Assembly (NCBI RefSeq): GCF_021869535.1
Contig: NW_026262690.1
Span: 38,688,001 to 38,752,000, forward strand
Reading direction: 5' to 3'
Length of the DNA: 64,000 nt
Origin: Mytilus californianus
Lineage: Eukaryota
A program made the position numbers and the translations under genes. Positions 34,901 to 54,000 of the stretch are shown in pieces (the first letter of the stretch is position 1; every line of letters starts with the position of its first letter). The notes under the pieces were generated by a model, which had not been told where the DNA came from, did no database searches, and saw only the letters and a program-made list of their open reading frames with translations.

Positions 34901-37900
34901 GAACATTGGCTATTTCTGGCAATTTTCATTTGAGCTACATACGATTTTCCCTCAATTTTTTAAATGATTCCTGAAAAGCATGATGATAAGTACAACAAAC
35001 ATGCACCAATATCCTTGGTTAGCTCTTCAGATAGCACCTGTATTATTTTTCACTCCTGAAGGTAGCATCAATGCTTTGTAGGGTCTTTTGGGGTCTACTC
35101 ACTATGATACAGAAAATCTTTCAACAACATGGAGGTGATAAAAGGTTTTTAGGTTTTCGTTCTTTTGGGGATTTTTGAATAAGGAGCATACTATTTCCCA
35201 CAAATTTGTATCTGCTGAGCGCAAGATTTCCTGCAAGTTTTCATATCCAAATGCTAAAAAAGCATTTTGATAAGTAAATCAAACATGTACCAAAGAGCTC
35301 ATCAGGTAGCACCTGCCTCATATTAAATAAATTCACAGTTATAGATCGACTGACGAATTTCTAACACCTGTAACTTAAGATGCCAAGTAATGGCTTTTAT
35401 CATACCTCTCTGTTTGATGTTACCTTTCAATAACTTATGCCAAGTTCAACAAGATGAAATAATTAAAAAAAACAGTTGCAAGGAACCAACTTTTGACATT
35501 TACTCCTCCATTGATCATCTTCGCTAGCCAAGGGTTACGATCCACTTCCCTCCTCTCCACCCTTGGCAGATTGAGATAGAATTATGGAGACACAAGGTAA
35601 TGATTTTCATTGGTTGCAGTCGAAACTCGCTGCATCCAATCAAAAAGCGCCTATAACATGATCACGTGTAAATGTAGAAAGTGTATGTAAACAATTGCCA
35701 CGTGCTTATTGTGCAACAAGTCTTTACATCCCTAAACATACGACTATATTTAGTGACAATTTGAATGTTTTTAATCAACTAATAGAAGTTCCTGTGTATG
35801 TTTCTTGCACAAATGCATGAATAGCAACATATATTTTCGTTTCCTGCTTTACCAAGTGTGTAGAATCTAGACGCTACCGTGTTTTTATTTCCAAATTGAA
35901 GAGTTCAAGTGCTACCATTGGTCAAGAATAATGTATTCGGAATGGGCGTGACTTTAATCTACCGATAGTTGGCGCAACATTGTTATCACAAATGTTGGCT
36001 TAATCTGCCAAGGGTGGAGAGGAGGGAAGTGGATCGTAACCCTTGGCTAGCGATGATGTCCATTGATATGTCCATTTATAATATAAAAAACATAACAATT
36101 GGTCATTCCTGCTCCATTTAAATAATTTTATTAAAATTGAGTAAAATCAAACCTCTTGAGGTGTAATTTTCTCAATTTTATATAACCCTTTCCAAGGTTT
36201 CTTTGCTTTATGTTGTGGCAAAATTCACAAATTTTAGGTTTCATTATTTGAATAAATAGCACATGATGGAAATAACTTAACATATTGGTCAAGTTCAAAT
36301 TTGATATATTTTAATGGTTTCTAATTTATGCTCTTAATACTTGGGAAAAGAGACAAGTTCAATGATTTTGCAGTTGATTAGAGTTGCTGTCTCTTCTACA
36401 TATATTCCACATTCCCTTTTATTCATATCAATTAATGCATTTGATGTAGCAACACAATATGCAGGATTGTATGATACATGTAACCTGAAACTGTTCTGTT
36501 TCAAAACTGAAAAGAAACTGGTATAAATGTATTTTATGGCATATAATTATAAAAGAAACAGAATAGAAGCAACTGTACAATTTTTTGTTGTTTTATACAG
36601 GTGATTACAGACACAGAATCTATTACAGCTGATCATGTTGTATCCTCCATATTTTCTCAAGGTAAATAAAGAAAGGAGTATTTTGCAATTGTTCATTTAA
36701 TATTGTAGGATTAGACAAAAAAAGACTTTAAAAAATACAAACTAAAAGCAAGTGGGCATGTTTCTATTAAAAACTGAACTGTCCTTGTTTAAATTATATA
36801 CTGTGGATTCATTTAATTTTTACGTGGATACCAATTTTCGTCAGTTGAGGAAAAATTGTGTTTTCATGGACTTACTTTTGATTTCTAGGTTTTGACAAAG
36901 TCTGCATACAAGCCTATAAACAATATATTCTTTATTGAATATTTGAATTCATTGTTTATCTTTAACCATGAAATCCACACAAATGGGTATCCATCAAATA
37001 ATAATGAATCCACAGTTCTTTACATATAAAGTTACTTAAAAATAATAATATATAGTTTCATAAAATACAATACCAATCTCAGATGGCATGTTTCTTCAAT
37101 AACCTTTATCAGGTATGTTGGAGATTGGCCTTGCGGTCATAAAAATTTTGGATAAAAAAACTGGGTTTGATGTTTCGAGCACAAATTTTGTACTCCCAAG
37201 TACGCAGTAATGTTTAATGACTGAGGGCCCAGACGTTATGGAAGTTAATTAACAATTCAAAAATAGAGGGCCAATACAAAGCTGCCAGAACTATTGTAGG
37301 TCAGCTTTGTTTGAGTAATTTGCCAACTTAACTCTGGTGTAATTTTGTAATTATTCAGCTGAAAGTTAACAGTAAACATGCATCATTTAATTCATGCTAC
37401 TTCAGAAACATTGGCTTCATGTCAGATGGAGACTGACAGACCCTTATCAGATAACTGACCTTGTTGTAGTTATGTATCATAACCATATCAGTGAGCACAT
37501 TTCATATTCTGTAAGCACCTTTGTCATGGTCACCTTGGACAAAAAAATTATGATTATGAAAGCCAAATATGTAAGAAACCAAGTGGTACCTAAACAAGAA
37601 GGTCGTTAAAAGAGGAGCCATTTGTAAACTTTTGTGTTATTCCTACAATTGAAATGCTATGAACATTTTTGATTCTTTGTAGATCTTTCAAAATTGCTTG
37701 GCAGTCCACAAGAAGAACTAGCTAACTTGCTTAATCAGATAACAGCTGTTTCATGTATAGTTGTAAATGTAGAATATAAAGATTATGTATCCCAGATAGA
37801 GGTACTAATATTTCAATATGGCAATACCAGTCTCAAAGCTATTTAAGGGTGCCTGGAAAAATTTGGTTGATTATTTAGGGAATCACTGAAGCATGAATGG

Positions 37901-40900
37901 AGCAGCCCCCCTCTATGGCAGTCAGCCCCCCCCCCCCCCCCCCCTCATGAAAATTTCTGGATCTGCCACTGATTTCAACAGATATGGTAAAGAACTAATG
38001 GTCAGTTTGTCCGCAAAATAGGCTCAACTATAATTTTGAATGACAAAATGAATGATAAAAAACCTAGAGAAAGCCCTCAGTGGTTTATGGAACAATTTTG
38101 TTTTGATTATTCTCCATCACCTACTTTTTATCCATATTTTCAATATTTATTTTTATTCAACAGACAAAAACAACAGAATAAGTGTTTCTTAGTTCTGAAA
38201 AAAAGTTTGTTTTTTCTATTTTCAACAGTAAGTATTCTTGTGAGTGAAGCCTTTTGGAGTGGTACGTAATGTCCTGTGAGGTGTTGTCCAATTTGGAAAA
38301 GATACTGACAATTCATTATTAACTTTTACTTTCACTTTCATTTTAACGTCGCCAAACCTATTATTGTGATGTAACGTCTTGTTAACCTTTGTAACCCCAT
38401 ATGCACAGCATTTTATGTACTTCAGTTTTTGTTTCCTATCATTAAATTGTCCTGAAGACGCCACCGTAAGTGGCGAAACATGTAGACCAGAATAAAGAAT
38501 TTCCTTGCAGTAATCTAGGATGTTGTTGTCTTTGTGTATCATTATTTTCCCAAGGTTTTAAGACAACCGCATCATACTTCCGGGTATCCATGCTGATTAC
38601 TCTACCAGCTTGTACCGTCAGAAGGTGTTGGTTCACTCGATGCATCAGTAAGTATTCTTGTTTAAAAAAAATTTCAAATCATCACACTCTTTGTGGAGAA
38701 TTTTATTTTCAGTAGCCACCCTTCTATTTACTTTAAAAGAAATCCATCCAAGAAACTTATTTAGCATGACCTCAGTTTATGTAACCACATAGATAAGTCA
38801 TCTTTATTTTTATTTGTTTTTTTTATATCTACTAACAAATTGTGATGTTTACAGGGATTTGGACATTTACTACCATCTTCTGAGGATCCATGTGTGTTAG
38901 GTGTTATATACGATTCTTCTACTTTCAAACAACATGATGCTGCAAAATATGTATCTAGTAGATATACAGTAAGTCCTCAGTTACGGTAATAATGTACAAG
39001 GGCTGATTTTAATTGTTTTTCATTAATTAGTTCAATGATAAAAATTTTACATTCTAACATAATTAACACTGTCATGTTGCCAGTGCATAACATTTGCGCA
39101 CATTACCATTACATTTGAGCGTAAAAATCATTATGTTTGCATGCAGCTTTTGATTACATTTGCTCACATTAATTTTACAGGTAAACACAGGTAAATCTTA
39201 ATAGGTAAACACATGTAAATTGTAAGGAGGAAGTTGGATTTTGAGCAGGATAAGTCCATTTTATTTTGTACATTCACCAAGGCCTGGAAATGCAAATCTA
39301 TTGAGTAAAAGTCTTAGAACAGATTTAACATGTTGGTATGTTCTGAATATTTGAAGCCCACTGCTTAAAGAAAATGAATTAGGCCAACTCCTCCATTATT
39401 ATATTTTAGGAATTGCTCCATCAGATACTCTGTTTTCTCTTTCACACTTTTACATGCAATTGCTAGTGTAAATGTTAAAATACTGTCAAGAGATACTAAA
39501 ATACATTGATGTGCTGAATAAAATTGCTCATTGTACTGAGCATGGAATGATTCAGGGCCATATGTAGAAATTCAATATGAAAAATATATAATTTAAAATT
39601 ATGAATATGTTCAAAATTAATAACCATCAACATATTCATTATGAATCATCTTTATAATTACCTGTTTTACCTGTAAAATGAATGCACACAAATGTTATCA
39701 AAAGCTGCGCGCAAATGTAATGCACCCCATGTTGCCTAATAGATGTTAAACAGAATATTTTTTTCATAACATTCTAAATACATTTTTTTTATATGCAATA
39801 TCTGAGTAAGCCTACTTTCATATTCATATTTGTAGGACTGAACGCAATGATCCTCCAAATAGCGATGGTCTCGCTAAAGTGCAATGGATGCATTGTGACA
39901 CTATCTTGTTGATATTTAGCCAAAGTGCGATGGGCTACATAAACTATATTTTCAATGCTTTTCATGTCGATGTAGAAGTCCATTGGTTTGTTTGAAGCAG
40001 TTTTTGGTTTTTTAAGTTAATAAGGGGCTTATACACTTTTAATACTACGGGAAATGGGGTGTGAATGGTGGAGAGTGGAAAGTTTACCTTCTGTAGTGTA
40101 TTTTTTTTTCTCGAAATCTACAAAAGGTTCTTTTTAGCTCACTGGGGCCCGAAGGGCCCCATGTGAGCTTATGCCATCACTTGGCGGCCGTCGTTGTCCG
40201 TTGTCTGTCGTCGTCGTCTGTCGTCGTAAACTATTTAAAAAATCTTCTCCTCTAAAACTATTGGGCCAAATACCTTCAAACGTTAACTAAATGTTCCTTA
40301 GGGTATCTAGTTTATAAAATGTATCCGAAGTTTTGATCCATCGACAAACATGGCCGCCATGGCTAAAAATAGAACATAGGGGTCAAATGCAATTTTTGGC
40401 TTATATCTCAAAAACTAAAGCTTTTAGAGCAAATCTGACACGGGGTAAAATTGTATATAAACTGTAAGCAGCAATAATGTTCAGCAAAGTAAGATCTACA
40501 AAAAAGTTAATATGACCATAATTGTCAATTGACCCCTTAAAGACAATTTTACACAATTTGTTCATCAAGTTTGCTAACATTTAAAAATCTTCTCCTCTGA
40601 AACTACTGGGCCAATTACCCTCAACTTTTAATTAAATGTTCCTTAGGTTATCTTGTTTAAAAATTGTATCCGAAGTTTGTATCCATCGACAAACATGGCC
40701 GCCATGGCTAAAAATAGAACATAAGGGTCAAATCCAGTTTTTGGCTTATATCTCAAAAACTAAATCTTTTAGAGCAAATGTGACATGGGGTAAAATTGTT
40801 CAGTTGGTCAAGATCTATCAGCTCTGAAATTTTCAGACGAATCAAACAACCCATTGTTGGGTTGCTGCCACCGAATTTGTAGTTTTAACAAAATTTTGCA

Positions 40901-51000: not shown

Positions 51001-54000
51001 AATCTTCATAGTATAATATATTTGAGATCATATGGGACTATTATCATGATTATACAAGTTTTTTCTAATGAAAATTTAAAGATCTACATTTAACTGCAAT
51101 TTGTATAGTTTTCCTTTGATCCTACTGCCTAACATTTGTTTAGAGCACAGATAGGACTTGATACTCTAAAATATTAGGCAATGAAATCACATATCAGTGC
51201 AGTAACGTTGCATGTTCATGTCCATTTGCATCAATTTATCAATAAAATGCAGTGGTCTAAGTAGTTGAACTACTGTATCACTAGCCAGTCAACACTGAGG
51301 TTGTGAGTTCGAATCCCATATGTGGCAGGTGCGCTCGACTCCAATCTTAATTTACTAGGATTGCCACTTTTCCTGCTGAAGGTCGGTGGTTCTCTCCGGG
51401 CACGACAGTTCTTCCACCAATAAAAACTGAAATAGCACAATAGTGTTGAAAGTGGTGTTAAAAACCAACCAATCAATCAATATTAAATCATGTGGTCATA
51501 TACATTTTTTTTGTACATATGGAAATGAGATGTGCCAATGCTAATACAACTGCTACCAAATACCATTGACTTTTCATAAGTCGTTCCCTTTAAAAAAACC
51601 TAAACACAAACATTAACTTGTAAACTAAGCAAAAGTTTCAAAGTCAATAGACCATGACTGAAGGGGCGGGACCAAATAATCTACATGGAAATGAGATATG
51701 CCAATGTTTATACAACTGCATACCAAATATCATTGACCTACCACTAGTGGTTTACCATAAACTGATCTAATCACAAACTAATACATGTACATGAAAACTA
51801 AGCAAAATTTTCAAAGTCCATAGACCATGACTGAAGGGGCGGGGCCAAATAATCTCCATGGAAATGAGATATGCCAATGCTTATACAAGTGCATACCAAA
51901 TATCATTGACCTACCACTAGTGGTTCCCCATAAACTGACCTAATCACAAACTAATGCATGAAAACAAAGCAAAGTTTCAAAGTCAAAAATTCGTAAGGGT
52001 TCCATGGAACCCAGTGTCTAGCCTACTTTTGCTGTTAATTGCAGGCTCAACAAAAATGAGGAAAAAAATCAATAAAAATATTCCTTTAGATACTATCTTT
52101 TGATTGTAAGAAGCTTCTGTCAAAGTTTGGTATAAATCCAGGATAGTTTATGAATCTAATAAATGTTTTAAAAACTTTAACTGCAGACTGTATTTAATGT
52201 TAACTGGAAGAAAAACTAAGTCCATTTATAAGTAAAATACGGATAAACAGGTACAAATTTTAACGAAATTTCCTTCTAGATACTAGCTTTTGATCATAAA
52301 CAAGCTTCTGTTCAAAATTTGGTACAAATCCAGGATAGTTTAAGAAAGTTATTAAAATTTTAAAAACTTTAACCACAGAGTGAATGTATTGTTTCCTGGC
52401 AGAAAAACTAAGTCCATTTATAAGTAAAATATGGAAAAAAAGAAATTTTTTTTTTAACAAATTTACTTCTGGATACTATCTTATGATCATAAACAAGCTT
52501 CTGTCCAAGTTAGGTACAAATCCAGGATAGTTTAAGAAAGTTATTAAAATTTTAAAAACTTTAACCACAGAGTGAATGTCATGTTTCCTGGCAGAAAAAC
52601 TAAGTCCATTTACAAGTAAAATATGGAAAAACAGGAATTTTTTTTTTTTAAATTTACTTCTGGATACTATCTTATGATCATAAACAAGCTTCTGTCCAAG
52701 TTTGGTAGAAATCCAGGATAGTTTAAGAAAGTTATTAAAATTTCAAAAACTTTAACCACAGAGTGATATTTGTGGACGCCGCCGACGACGACGGAATGTA
52801 GGATCGCTATGTCTCGCTTTTTCAACTAAAGTCGAAGGCTCGACAATAAACCATGACTGAGGGGGCGGGGCCAAATAATCTCCATGGTAATGAGATGTGC
52901 CAATGCTAATTCAACTGCATACCAAATATCATTGACTTACCACTAGCTAGTTAAATCACACACTAATACATCGTTGACGATGCGGCCACCACCGGAAACA
53001 GCATACCTATGTCTTGCTTTTTGACTCCGTCAAGGCGAGACAAAAATAACTGACGCCACTGCCAAATCAGTTCCACTAATGAAAAGGAGTTTAATTCAGC
53101 TGAATTTTGGCCTGCCAACTCATCCAACTATTTGAAAAGGAGTTTCATCCAGATGAATGAAAGTCTGCCAACTCACCCCACTTATAAAAAGGAGTTTAAT
53201 CTCAATGTATAAAAAGCCAGCCAACTCGCCCCACTAATGCAAAGGAAAGTTGGTTCTGGTCTGAATTCAGCAGGATTAAACTCCTTTTATTATGCTTAAA
53301 TAATGAGGGAGTTTGCTTGCTTTTATAACAGTGGGATACAACTTCTTTTAGTTAGTGGGCTAGTTGCAGCTTCATGTAGGTCTTACATGTAATTCAGCAG
53401 GATTTAAACCCTTTTTAATATACACCTTATCGCTATTTGGAAATCTGCGTCAGTTGACCCGAAAATCTGCACCGCTTGAACTTTTGACGTCATACAACAA
53501 TCAATTTTCCATTGTGGCATCAGATATTTTCTATTGTGACGTCATAATTTTTCGGGTACCTTTGTGATGTTCAGTAATGGTGGACAAATAGCGATAAGGT
53601 GTATTACTGGGTCGAGTTGGTTCAGGACAATTTGGCAATGGGGCAAGTTGTCATGGATTCAGGTTCATGGATGTCGCATTAAAATAAATAACTTTTATAT
53701 GAAACAACTGCATGTCAACTTAAAATTCTTTTGTATCTGGGACATTAATATATAATCTATTGGTCCCAGCATTGCAGCAAGGAAATTGTACTAAAACATT
53801 TAGATAACAGAGCTTGGAAGATTTCCTATCTATTTTACTATTATTTTATCAATGTTAAAATATTGTCATAGACTGGAATGTTTGAAAGAAGGATTATTGC
53901 ACGGCCCCAACTTGTCTGGCAAAACAGCCGTTGGACGTCAGAGTAATCTCGGACTATACAATCCCTAGGTCCCAGGTTGTACATTGTATATACTTTGACA

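What the first reader, a model, noticed from the sequence alone, without database searches (positions are those of the whole stretch)
38226..38661. Hammerhead-ribozyme element (retrozyme-like) in sense orientation inside PPOX intron 8
Seen: a complete minimal type I hammerhead at 38449-38487 (CTGAAGA, one inserted C, stem II GCCAC/GTGGC, GAAA, palindromic ACATGT stem III, GUA cleavage site after 38484, 3-bp stem I GTC/GAC), followed by AATAAA. It sits in a non-coding segment bounded by a perfect 16-bp direct repeat 420 bp apart. Known: minimal type I hammerheads with palindromic stem III occur in Penelope-like pLTRs and in metazoan non-LTR retrozymes (described from mussels), act as dimers and can yield circular RNAs of a few hundred nt. 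Inference: this is a single non-autonomous monomer. It is co-transcribed with PPOX pre-mRNA and probably tolerated because a lone minimal motif cleaves poorly, but dimerisation in trans could cut the intron. The 16-mer may be a TSD or a terminal redundancy, and it contains a CA|GTAAGT donor-like motif.
Basis: partly seen in the sequence, partly recalled or inferred. Interest (0 to 1): 0.78.

Follow-up and report, generated by a model that had tools for sequence, protein, structure and literature searches.

The report
Truncated Penelope-type hammerhead element in PPOX intron
The flagged stretch is a front-truncated, dead-on-arrival copy of a 750-base non-coding mussel jumping element that borrows its ends and its small "hammerhead" self-cutting RNA motif from Penelope-like retrotransposons; it is a real but ordinary passenger inside an intron of the PPOX gene.

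Summary

The bare core pattern is expected about once per 64 kb by chance, so the case rests on comparison with other copies:
- 38242-38645 is positions 349-750 of a ~750-bp non-coding repeat with at least 452 genomic candidates.
- Solo copies share one 3' end, have variable 5' ends, and carry their own 9-16-bp target-site duplications.
- The family also forms 750/753-bp tandem and head-to-head arrays.

About 285 nt of the window copy is 81% identical to the terminal region of an intact RT + GIY-YIG Penelope-like element (PLE) in the same genome.

Hammerheads from 22 diverged elements covary in helix II (6 of 6 pairs) and helix I. A model built without this family finds the window motif at E = 8e-16.

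The motif has the published hallmarks of the PLE "minimal" hammerhead. It lies in sense orientation in a 1,053-nt PPOX intron; the intron number was not checked.

It is a truncated piece, not a complete ~420-nt monomer. RNA reads show low expression and no cleavage ends.

The scan had already noted other hammerhead repeat families (537-544 bp) in this genome. Verdict: a new member of a known kind.

The parts
38226..38241 (.). Left copy of the 16-bp target-site duplication
   Evidence: Perfect repeat of 38646-38661. It abuts the first base of family homology. 0 of 300 shuffles give a shared string this long.
38242..38645 (+). 5'-truncated solo copy (unit positions 349-750) of a ~750-bp non-coding, Penelope-derived repeat family
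   Evidence: 91.6% identical to the reference unit L011:1153-1902 and 94% to L002. At least 452 genomic candidates. It shares the family's canonical 3' end, while its 5' end is one of many different truncation points.
38314..38639 (+). Part homologous to the terminal region of autonomous Penelope-like elements
   Evidence: 80.7% identity over 285 ungapped columns to L065:570-862 (score 241; shuffles 29 +/- 4.4). 70.8% to L021:2513-2827. Both loci encode RVT_1 + GIY-YIG ORFs.
38449..38487 (+). Minimal type I hammerhead motif. Helix I 38449-51/38485-87; core CUGAAGA 38452-58; unpaired C 38459; helix II 38460-64/38470-74; GAAA 38475-78; palindromic helix III ACAUGU 38478-83; predicted cut after A38484.
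   Evidence: Direct reading. Covariance model built from 21 other elements: 60.1 bits, E = 8.2e-16. Covariation in helices I and II across 22 elements. None of the copy's 31 differences from the family majority falls in the motif.
38491..38496 (+). AATAAA polyadenylation-signal-like hexamer just after the predicted cut site
   Evidence: Direct reading. An AATAAA-like box follows the hammerhead in most of the diverged families and in the autonomous elements.
38544..38645 (+). 3' 'tail' module (unit ~648-750)
   Evidence: In arrays, this ~100-nt piece is the one found inverted at the left end and missing from the right end. The autonomous element L021 shows the same layout. In L065 the terminal repeat ends at the equivalent of unit ~649.
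38646..38661 (.). Right copy of the 16-bp target-site duplication
   Evidence: It starts right after the family's canonical 3' terminus.
37683..37801 (+). Upstream PPOX exon (acceptor AG before 37683, donor GT at 37802)
   Evidence: Open frame ending ...[21 protein letters not shown]. It joins in frame to the next exon. The PDB search of this piece alone gave no PPOX hit, so its assignment rests on reading frame, splice sites and my own recollection of PPOX.
38855..38968 (+). Downstream PPOX exon (acceptor AG at 38853-54, donor GT at 38969)
   Evidence: [24 protein letters not shown] aligns to human protoporphyrinogen oxidase 3NKS residues 328-359, E = 1.3e-8.

Best explanation
38242-38645 is a retroposed, 5'-truncated copy of a ~750-nt non-coding element that is a non-autonomous derivative of endonuclease-bearing Penelope-like elements (PLEs). 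It carries the PLE-type minimal hammerhead.

Shown:
- Family membership and the sharp 3' end.
- The truncation point and the 16-bp target-site duplication.
- Homology of the hammerhead-plus-tail region to intact RT + GIY-YIG PLEs of the same genome.
- Covariation supporting the hammerhead fold across diverged families.

Inferred:
- A master copy or array was transcribed.
- Its PLE-like 3' tail was recognised in trans by the RT-endonuclease of an L065-like PLE.
- Reverse transcription was primed at a nick in the PPOX intron and started at the element's 3' end, possibly helped by CA(A) microhomology.
- Synthesis stopped at unit position 349.
- A second nick 16 bp away produced the duplication.

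The hammerhead is built to work as a dimer, with two ACAUGU palindromes forming helix III. Its presumed role is to process multimeric transcripts of tandem copies.

The window copy has only one motif within 64 kb. It is therefore most likely an inert passenger that is transcribed in sense with PPOX pre-mRNA and removed with the intron.
For: Family and ends:
- At least 452 candidates, with full-length hits at 88-95% identity.
- Homology is bounded at 38242 and 38644/5 in every locus.
- The other copies continue 5' into conserved sequence, so the window copy is truncated.
- Solo copies end at unit 750 and start at positions 1, 5, 9, 18, 98, 321, 349 and 351; copies with an inverted partner start at 263 and 235.
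- Target-site duplications of 16, 14, 10, 9 and 9 bp in different copies.

PLE link:
- L021 and L065 have 749/746-aa ORFs with RVT_1 + GIY-YIG.
- These are flanked by 972/640-bp direct repeats that carry the same hammerhead architecture followed by AATAAA.
- Unit 509-745 is 78% identical and unit 6-72 is 83% identical to L065.
- A ~490-nt alignment scores 337.
- The window aligns directly to L065 at 80.7%.
- Family arrays show the PLE-type layout of tandem plus inverted copies with a displaced ~100-nt tail, as described for PLEs in PMC8557442.

Hammerhead:
- 91.7% of cells are paired, against 77.4 +/- 1.7 in shuffles and 21-42% in slid registers.
- 44 double-change cells against 15 +/- 3.3; 6 of 6 helix II pairs covary; one helix I pair is GC in 14 sequences and AU in 6.
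- De novo RNAalifold finds helix II and no competing fold.
- The independent model gives E = 8.2e-16.
- The predicted dimer forms the 6-bp ACAUGU helix: -27.4 kcal/mol against 2 x -9.9.

Non-coding: the longest stop-free stretch is 50 aa on the + strand.
Against: - No self-cleavage is shown. RNA reads are few (69, 114 and 35 per ~1.5 Gb sampled), and no molecule ends accumulate at the predicted cut, L011 1739/1740.
- Copy ends never coincide with the cut site.
- Minimal PLE hammerheads cleave poorly in vitro even as dimers (PMC4209133).
- Rfam models do not recognise the motif, although they also miss the one in a true PLE.
- The closest autonomous element found is only ~80% identical at the shared ends, and the middle of the unit (80-430) matches no PLE. 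The actual helper is therefore not identified.
- The 22 hammerheads used for covariation were picked by eye from the first 100 of 742 hits, so some selection bias is possible.
- No empty-site allele was available.
Confidence: 0.8

Rival explanations
1. The family is a true animal retrozyme. Tandem arrays are transcribed, hammerhead dimers cut out 750-nt monomers, a tRNA ligase circularises them, and the circles are the templates for rolling reverse transcription that makes new arrays. The window copy would be an aborted product of that cycle.
For: - Tandem arrays of 750/753-bp units, up to at least 14 units long, each with an intact hammerhead.
- The unit is non-coding.
- Target-site duplications are longer than 4 bp.
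- 'Full-length' solo copies are about one unit long, and one has 1.07 units, which fits one turn on a circle.
- A 750->9 'goes back' joint occurs in an RNA-library contig and in 2 reads.
- PLEs are the proposed helpers of retrozymes (PMC7229834).
Against: - The unit is about twice the described size (150-450 bp), and the hammerhead is the minimal PLE type rather than the canonical one.
- RNA is scarce, with no ends at the cut site. However, three of the four libraries are oligo-dT or of unknown selection, and those lose circles.
- The predicted circular fold is weaker than shuffles (-139.6 against -154 +/- 6.3 kcal/mol, 55% paired), unlike the highly self-paired retrozyme circles.
- Fixed 3' ends at unit 750 or ~648, equal to those of the autonomous PLE, fit a linear template as well.
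- The back-joint cannot tell a circle from a tandem transcript.
Confidence: 0.2
2. The stretch is simply a 5'-truncated copy of an autonomous Penelope-like element (a remnant of its terminal repeat), not of a separate non-autonomous family.
For: The hammerhead-plus-tail region is homologous to autonomous PLEs, and PLEs are typically heavily 5'-truncated (PMC8557442).
Against: - The window copy is 92-95% identical to the 750-bp family across its whole length, including 38242-38313, which has no counterpart in the PLEs. It is only 71-81% identical to the PLEs sampled.
- None of the 30 PLE loci fetched carries this family's helix II sequence.
Confidence: 0.07
3. The hammerhead-like letters are a chance resemblance inside an ordinary repeat or satellite, and the RNA adopts another fold.
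For: - The loose core pattern is expected ~0.9 times per window.
- Rfam gives no hit.
- The single-sequence fold is not exceptional (z = -1.57).
- In longer context, an upstream CUUCAG can pair with the CUGAAG of the core.
- An earlier scan note described a hammerhead look-alike in another family of this genome.
Against: - Covariation in both helices across families with different helix II sequences.
- 25-fold genomic excess over the reversed control.
- Presence of the motif in the terminal repeats of intact PLEs.
- E = 8e-16 with an independent model.
- The consensus fold shows no conserved alternative, and the upstream box does not covary with core position 7.
Confidence: 0.02

Closest known systems
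Minimal type I hammerheads of metazoan Penelope-like elements (Cervera & de la Pena 2014, PMC4209133)
   Same: - Core CUGANGA...GAAA...UH.
- One unpaired nucleotide between A9 and G10.1.
- The G10.1-C11.1 pair.
- A 5-6-bp helix II and a 3-bp helix I.
- A tiny palindromic helix III that can only form properly in a dimer.
- Location in the terminal repeat region of RT + GIY-YIG elements; many copies scattered as single truncated elements.
   Different: - This is a mussel lineage not described there.
- The cleavage triplet here is GUA, while most sister families in this genome have GUC.
- Activity is untested.
Non-LTR retrozymes of animals, including Mytilus galloprovincialis (Cervera & de la Pena 2020, PMC7229834)
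   Same: - Non-coding and non-autonomous.
- The family forms tandem arrays with one type I hammerhead per unit.
- Low GC (41%).
- Target-site duplications longer than 4 bp.
- PLEs are suspected as helpers.
   Different: - The unit is 750 bp rather than 150-450 bp (350-390 bp in mussel).
- The hammerhead is minimal, not canonical.
- RNA is scarce in the runs examined rather than very abundant.
- The predicted circle is not highly self-paired.
- The ends are directly homologous to an autonomous PLE.
- The window holds a solo truncated piece, not an array.
Canonical EN+ Penelope-like elements (Penelope/Poseidon, Neptune, Nematis; Craig et al. 2021, PMC8557442)
   Same: - 5' truncation and partial tandems (pseudo-LTRs).
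- An adjacent inverted 5'-truncated copy.
- A displaced terminal 'tail'.
- A hammerhead in the repeat.
- ~80% sequence identity of the terminal ~300 nt to L065.
   Different: - No RT or GIY-YIG ORF.
- Arrays of many units rather than one and a half.
- The tail here is ~100 nt, against the 30-40 bp described.
- Clade assignment of the helper was not done.

Membership tests
Hammerhead ribozyme, PLE-type minimal type I | Conserved catalytic core CUGANGA / GAAA / UH in the right order and spacing | tested here: met
   Direct reading at 38452-38484. Full-length match to model R1, built from 21 other elements: 60.1 bits, E = 8.2e-16.
Hammerhead ribozyme, PLE-type minimal type I | Helix II closed by G10.1-C11.1 and supported by compensatory changes | tested here: met
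   All 6 helix II pairs change on both sides across 22 elements. The closing pair is GC in 17, GU in 4 and AU in 1. RNAalifold recovers the helix de novo.
Hammerhead ribozyme, PLE-type minimal type I | [quoted passage not shown] | tested here: met
   C38459. One such nucleotide is present in all 22 aligned motifs. Listed as a hallmark in PMC4209133.
Hammerhead ribozyme, PLE-type minimal type I | Short palindromic helix III allowing a dimeric active form | tested here: met
   ACAUGU at 38478-83. The predicted homodimer forms the 6-bp intermolecular helix, -27.4 against 2 x -9.9 kcal/mol. The palindrome was fixed by my search pattern, so its conservation across families was not tested independently.
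Hammerhead ribozyme, PLE-type minimal type I | Helix I flanking the cut site | tested here: met
   GUC/GAC, 3 bp. The outer pair covaries (GC in 14, AU in 6), and this helix lay outside the search pattern.
Hammerhead ribozyme, PLE-type minimal type I | Site-specific self-cleavage | tested here: inconclusive
   No accumulation of read ends at the predicted site, but depth there is only ~3-10.
Hammerhead ribozyme (Rfam models) | Match to a curated hammerhead covariance model | tested here: not met
   No hit at gathering score or at E <= 10. The same models also miss the hammerhead in the terminal repeat of the RT + GIY-YIG element L021, so the test does not discriminate for this variant.
Penelope-like element (autonomous) | ORF with reverse transcriptase and GIY-YIG endonuclease | tested here: not met
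   The unit has no stop-free stretch over 50 aa on the + strand or 102 aa on the - strand. The window piece is 404 nt. The element is therefore non-autonomous.
Penelope-like element (derivative / mobilised by) | Terminal sequences shared with an autonomous PLE | tested here: met
   78-83% identity of unit 509-745 and 6-72 to L065. The window aligns to L065 at 80.7% over 285 columns. L065 encodes RVT_1 + GIY-YIG.
Penelope-like element (derivative / mobilised by) | Insertion architecture: 5' truncation, partial tandems, adjacent inverted copy, displaced tail, variable target-site duplication | tested here: met
   Family level. The same layout is seen in L021. The window copy shows only the truncation and the duplication.
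Animal non-LTR retrozymes | Short tandem repeats (150-450 bp), each with a canonical type I hammerhead | tested here: not met
   The unit is 750/753 bp with a minimal hammerhead. The window holds one truncated solo copy and no second motif in 64 kb.
Animal non-LTR retrozymes | Abundant linear and circular RNAs cut at the hammerhead site | tested here: inconclusive
   35-114 reads per ~1.3-1.6 Gb sampled and no ends at the site. One back-joint was seen that a tandem transcript would also give. The libraries are mostly oligo-dT.
Animal non-LTR retrozymes | Highly self-paired circular RNA | tested here: not met
   Circular MFE is -139.6 kcal/mol against -154.0 +/- 6.3 for shuffles, with 55% paired.

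The most novel reading that the evidence does not exclude
The 750-nt family would be a living intermediate between autonomous Penelope-like elements and retrozymes: a PLE stripped of its ORF that keeps the PLE 5' start, hammerhead and 3' tail. On this reading its long tandem and head-to-head arrays arise by rolling reverse transcription of hammerhead-processed circular RNA by the PLE enzyme. That would give the first sequence-level proof of which helper moves animal retrozymes.
Probability: 0.2. Interest if true: 0.6.

Novelty: new member of a known kind. Interest (0 to 1): 0.35.

Why it matters
For the window itself, little. It is one more truncated retroelement in an intron, probably harmless to PPOX because a lone minimal hammerhead is reported not to cut.

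At family level it is more useful. This non-coding, array-forming element shares its 5' start, its hammerhead and its 3' tail with intact RT + GIY-YIG Penelope-like elements of the same genome. That is direct sequence support for the published but unproven idea that PLE enzymes mobilise hammerhead-bearing non-autonomous repeats in animals.

The several sister families with compensatory helix changes also give a clean comparative data set for the poorly understood minimal hammerhead, which curated RNA models currently miss.

Tried and rejected
- **Rfam:** whole window at gathering score, and the region at E <= 10. No hammerhead was found. Rejected as evidence because the models also miss the motif in a true PLE.
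- **Alternative fold:** in single-sequence folds an upstream CUUCAG pairs with the CUGAAG of the core. It is not recovered as a consensus and does not covary.
- **Second model hit:** 53608-53631(-), E = 0.06. The sequence shows no related element, so it is chance.
- **Empty site or haplotig in the assembly:** the downstream flank is unique. The upstream flank only hits an unrelated ~120-bp repeat.
- **Copies starting at the predicted cut** (a lead from an earlier scan note): none among the sampled 5' ends.
- **Small 42-aa ORF of the unit against the zinc-finger ORF downstream of the PLE RT:** no similarity.
- **Closer relative at C1:26323615:** only a truncated inverted/direct fragment with no ORF.
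- **PDB search of the upstream exon:** only a spurious designed-repeat protein hit.
- **Larger sample of solo copies:** The statistics on 5' ends and duplications therefore rest on about 11 copies.
Full report
**1. Observation**

- helix I: GTC 38449-51 / GAC 38485-87
- CTGAAGA: 38452-58
- an extra C: 38459
- helix II: GCCAC / GTGGC around the loop CGTAA
- GAAA: 38475-78
- the palindrome ACATGT: 38478-83
- GTA with the predicted cut after 38484
- AATAAA: 38491-96

The 16-mer CAGTAAGTATTCTTGT occurs exactly twice in the window, at 38226-41 and 38646-61. Chance expectation is 0.06.

Taken alone, the motif is weak evidence:
- A loose core pattern is expected 0.92 times per window, and 61 of 100 shuffles contain one.
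- The single-sequence fold is unremarkable (z = -1.57).
- Rfam reports no hammerhead at gathering score or at E <= 10.
- However, Rfam also misses the hammerhead in the terminal repeat of an intact Penelope-like element of this genome, so its silence says nothing about this variant.

**2. What the stretch is**

A search of the window's own 1.65-Gb assembly with 38242-38645 gave at least 452 candidates. All 40 scored were strong, and most were full-length hits at 88-95% identity.

In every locus the homology to the window stops at 38242 and at 38644/5, exactly between the two 16-mers. Nearly all other copies continue 5' into a shared sequence that the window lacks. The window copy is therefore 5'-truncated.

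The reference unit is 750 bp (L011:1153-1902), and the window holds its positions 349-750 at 91.6% identity.

Simple solo copies all end at unit 750 plus a few bases. They start at positions 1, 5, 9, 18, 98, 321, 349 and 351; copies with an inverted partner start at 263 and 235. One fixed 3' end with scattered 5' ends is the signature of target-primed reverse transcription.

Five copies carry their own flanking duplications of 16, 14, 10, 9 and 9 bp, and three show none. The 16-mer is therefore a target-site duplication.

No empty site could be examined. The downstream flank is unique in the assembly.

The unit is non-coding: no stop-free stretch exceeds 50 aa on the + strand. Its GC content is 41%.

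**3. Family architecture**

The family also forms tandem arrays with periods of 750 or 753 bp at about 99.5% identity between units. It forms head-to-head double arrays too, for example 14 units on one strand followed by 12 on the other on contig C13.

Arrays typically read: inverted piece of unit 648-750, then a 5'-truncated unit, then n full units, then a last unit ending near 645-650. In other insertions the inverted partner ends near 653-655 and the direct copy ends at 750.

**4. Link to Penelope-like elements**

A genome-wide pattern for the same architecture (CTGANGA, 12-24 nt, GAAACATGTH) gave 742 matches against 29 for the reversed control. The exact family motif gave 162 against 0.

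Two matches 3,927 bp apart led to locus L021. [quoted passage not shown] The ORF is flanked by 972-bp direct repeats at 99.9% identity, with the hammerhead and an AATAAA near the end of each repeat. A 94-nt tail lies inverted at the left end. This is the same layout as in the 750-bp arrays, and it matches published descriptions of PLE insertions (PMC8557442).

Searching the genome with that protein found at least 11 copies at 99-100% identity with open frames, plus more distant PLE families.

One of these, L065, has a 746-aa RVT_1 + GIY-YIG ORF and 640-bp terminal repeats. It matches the 750-bp unit at 78% over positions 509-745 and at 83% over positions 6-72, in the same order across the unit junction. 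The window copy itself aligns to L065:570-862 at 80.7% over 285 ungapped columns (score 241; shuffles 29 +/- 4.4).

The middle of the unit (80-430) has no PLE counterpart. Its 42-aa ORF is unrelated to the PLE's downstream zinc-finger ORF.

The family therefore keeps a PLE's 5' start, hammerhead and 3' tail around unrelated non-coding filler. That is the usual anatomy of a non-autonomous derivative that borrows the parent's enzyme.

**5. Is the hammerhead real?**

The motif shows all the traits that Cervera and de la Pena (PMC4209133) list as distinguishing PLE minimal hammerheads from random hits:
- the G10.1-C11.1 pair
- palindromic positions 15.2-16.2 with a 2-nt palindromic insert
- a long helix II and a very short helix I

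I aligned the window motif with 21 motifs from other elements that have different helix II sequences, including the autonomous L021. On the hammerhead structure:
- 91.7% of cells pair, against 77.4 +/- 1.7 in column shuffles and 21-42% when partners are slid.
- 44 cells carry changes on both sides, against 15 +/- 3.3 (0 of 500 shuffles reach it).
- All six helix II pairs covary.
- The outer helix I pair, which lay outside the search pattern, is GC in 14 sequences and AU in 6.

RNAalifold on longer flanks recovers helix II and no competing consensus fold.

A covariance model built without the window and its family, but including both autonomous PLEs, finds 38446-38490 full length at 60.1 bits, E = 8.2e-16. 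The next hit (E = 0.06) proved to be chance.

One caveat applies: I chose the 20 extra motifs by eye from the first 100 listed, for diversity.

None of the window copy's 31 differences from the family majority falls in the 39-nt motif. About 3 would be expected, so this is only marginal evidence.

**6. Does it cut, and is there a circle?**

This could not be shown.

Reads from three raw RNA runs and contigs from one RNA library were laid on the family unit. The raw runs gave only 69, 114 and 35 reads per ~1.3-1.6 Gb sampled. In the stranded-looking run the reads were mostly sense.

No molecule ends accumulated anywhere, including the predicted cut at L011 1739/1740. Only one unit-end-to-unit-start joint was seen, and a tandem transcript would give the same joint.

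Three of the libraries are oligo-dT or of unknown selection, so circles could have been lost.

The predicted circular fold of the unit is weaker than shuffles: -139.6 against -154 +/- 6.3 kcal/mol. This is unlike the highly self-paired retrozyme circles (PMC7229834).

Copy ends never fall at the cut site.

The predicted homodimer does form the 6-bp ACAUGU helix. That fits the dimer model. In the literature, single minimal motifs did not cleave detectably, and dimers cleaved only weakly.

**7. Gene context**

The element lies in a 1,053-nt intron (37802-38854) on the + strand.
- The upstream exon (37683-37801) ends ...[11 protein letters not shown], with a GT donor.
- The downstream exon (38855-38968) begins [12 protein letters not shown]. 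It matches human protoporphyrinogen oxidase residues 328-359 at E = 1.3e-8.
- The upstream exon alone gave no PPOX hit in the structure database.

The hammerhead strand is the gene's sense strand. The element plus one duplication copy makes up 40% of the intron.

I did not count exons, so 'intron 8' is unverified.

There is no second hammerhead within the 64-kb window. No cis dimer, and hence no circle, can form from this locus.

**8. Mechanism, with its status**

Shown:
- membership of the family
- the truncation and the duplication
- the PLE-homologous ends
- the covarying hammerhead fold

Inferred:
- transcription of a master copy
- recognition of its PLE-like tail by an L065-like RT-endonuclease
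- priming at a nick in the PPOX intron, starting at the element's 3' end; the target reads CAAC and the family terminus reads GCAAC, a possible microhomology
- abortive synthesis at unit 349
- a second nick 16 bp away

The hammerhead's role, processing of multimeric transcripts as a dimer, is taken from the literature and is not shown here. The window copy is most likely inert.

**9. Comparison and novelty**

The element works like, and passes the sequence tests for, a PLE-type minimal hammerhead element. It fails the defining test of an autonomous PLE because it has no ORF.

It also fails several tests of the described animal retrozymes: unit size, canonical ribozyme, self-paired circle and abundant RNA.

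Scattered single minimal hammerheads 'probably related to truncated PLEs' were already reported in 2014. PLEs were already proposed as retrozyme helpers in 2020.

Earlier notes of this scan describe other hammerhead repeat families (537-544-bp units) and PLE fragments in this same genome, which they take to be a Mytilus mussel. None of the notes I saw concerned this 750-bp family.

I rate it a new member of a known kind. The window-level finding is ordinary. The family-level homology between a non-coding array-former and an intact PLE is the part worth keeping.

Noticed in passing
window 37855-37975: The same PPOX intron also holds a ~120-bp piece of a very abundant repeat: at least 1,393 genomic candidates, with 40 scored hits at 84-91% identity. 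Its type was not determined.
   Followed up: no
L021 (G000:C1:54233500-54242500); L050-L060: A Penelope-like family that looks recently active. At least 11 copies are 99-100% identical at protein level with open 755-aa frames, including a 3,927-bp-period tandem/inverted array at C110:55838728-55861135. Besides the RT + GIY-YIG ORF there is a 178-182-aa upstream ORF with no Pfam hit and a 219-227-aa downstream ORF with C2H2 zinc-finger hits, lying partly inside the terminal repeat.
   Followed up: partly
G000:C13:30174943-30194511; centre in L022:1336-1634: A ~20-kb head-to-head double array of the 753-bp subfamily, with 14 units on the - strand followed by 12 on the + strand. Its centre is made of several ~40-58-nt pieces of the unit's tail (688-745) in alternating orientation.
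   Followed up: partly
L009, L011, L014, L015, L017 (array right ends); L003, L004 (inverted partners); L065:771 and 4639: A recurrent second '3' end' at unit ~645-655. Arrays stop there while an inverted tail (648-750) sits at the other side. The same point is the end of the terminal repeat in the autonomous element L065. This suggests two priming sites on opposite target strands, like twin priming.
   Followed up: partly
window 38417-38425; equivalent position in L024-L042: A conserved box GTACTTCAG lies ~25-30 nt upstream of the hammerhead in almost all diverged families and in the autonomous elements, without covariation to the core. It looks like a 3' splice site. In Drosophila virilis Penelope an intron ends at the 5' edge of helix I. 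Its function here is unknown.
   Followed up: no
L011:1553-1652 (unit ~400-500): The two oligo-dT RNA runs show a sharp ~100-nt coverage peak with shared loose ends and fixed differences. The likely source is a diverged copy embedded in a polyadenylated host transcript, not expression of the family.
   Followed up: no
L072-L079 and further places listed: A far more abundant PLE group (about 16,900 first-look candidates for the RT-EN query overall) has 929-aa open frames at 41-42% identity to L021. None of the 8 fetched loci (L072-L079) contains the ACATGT-type hammerhead pattern.
   Followed up: no
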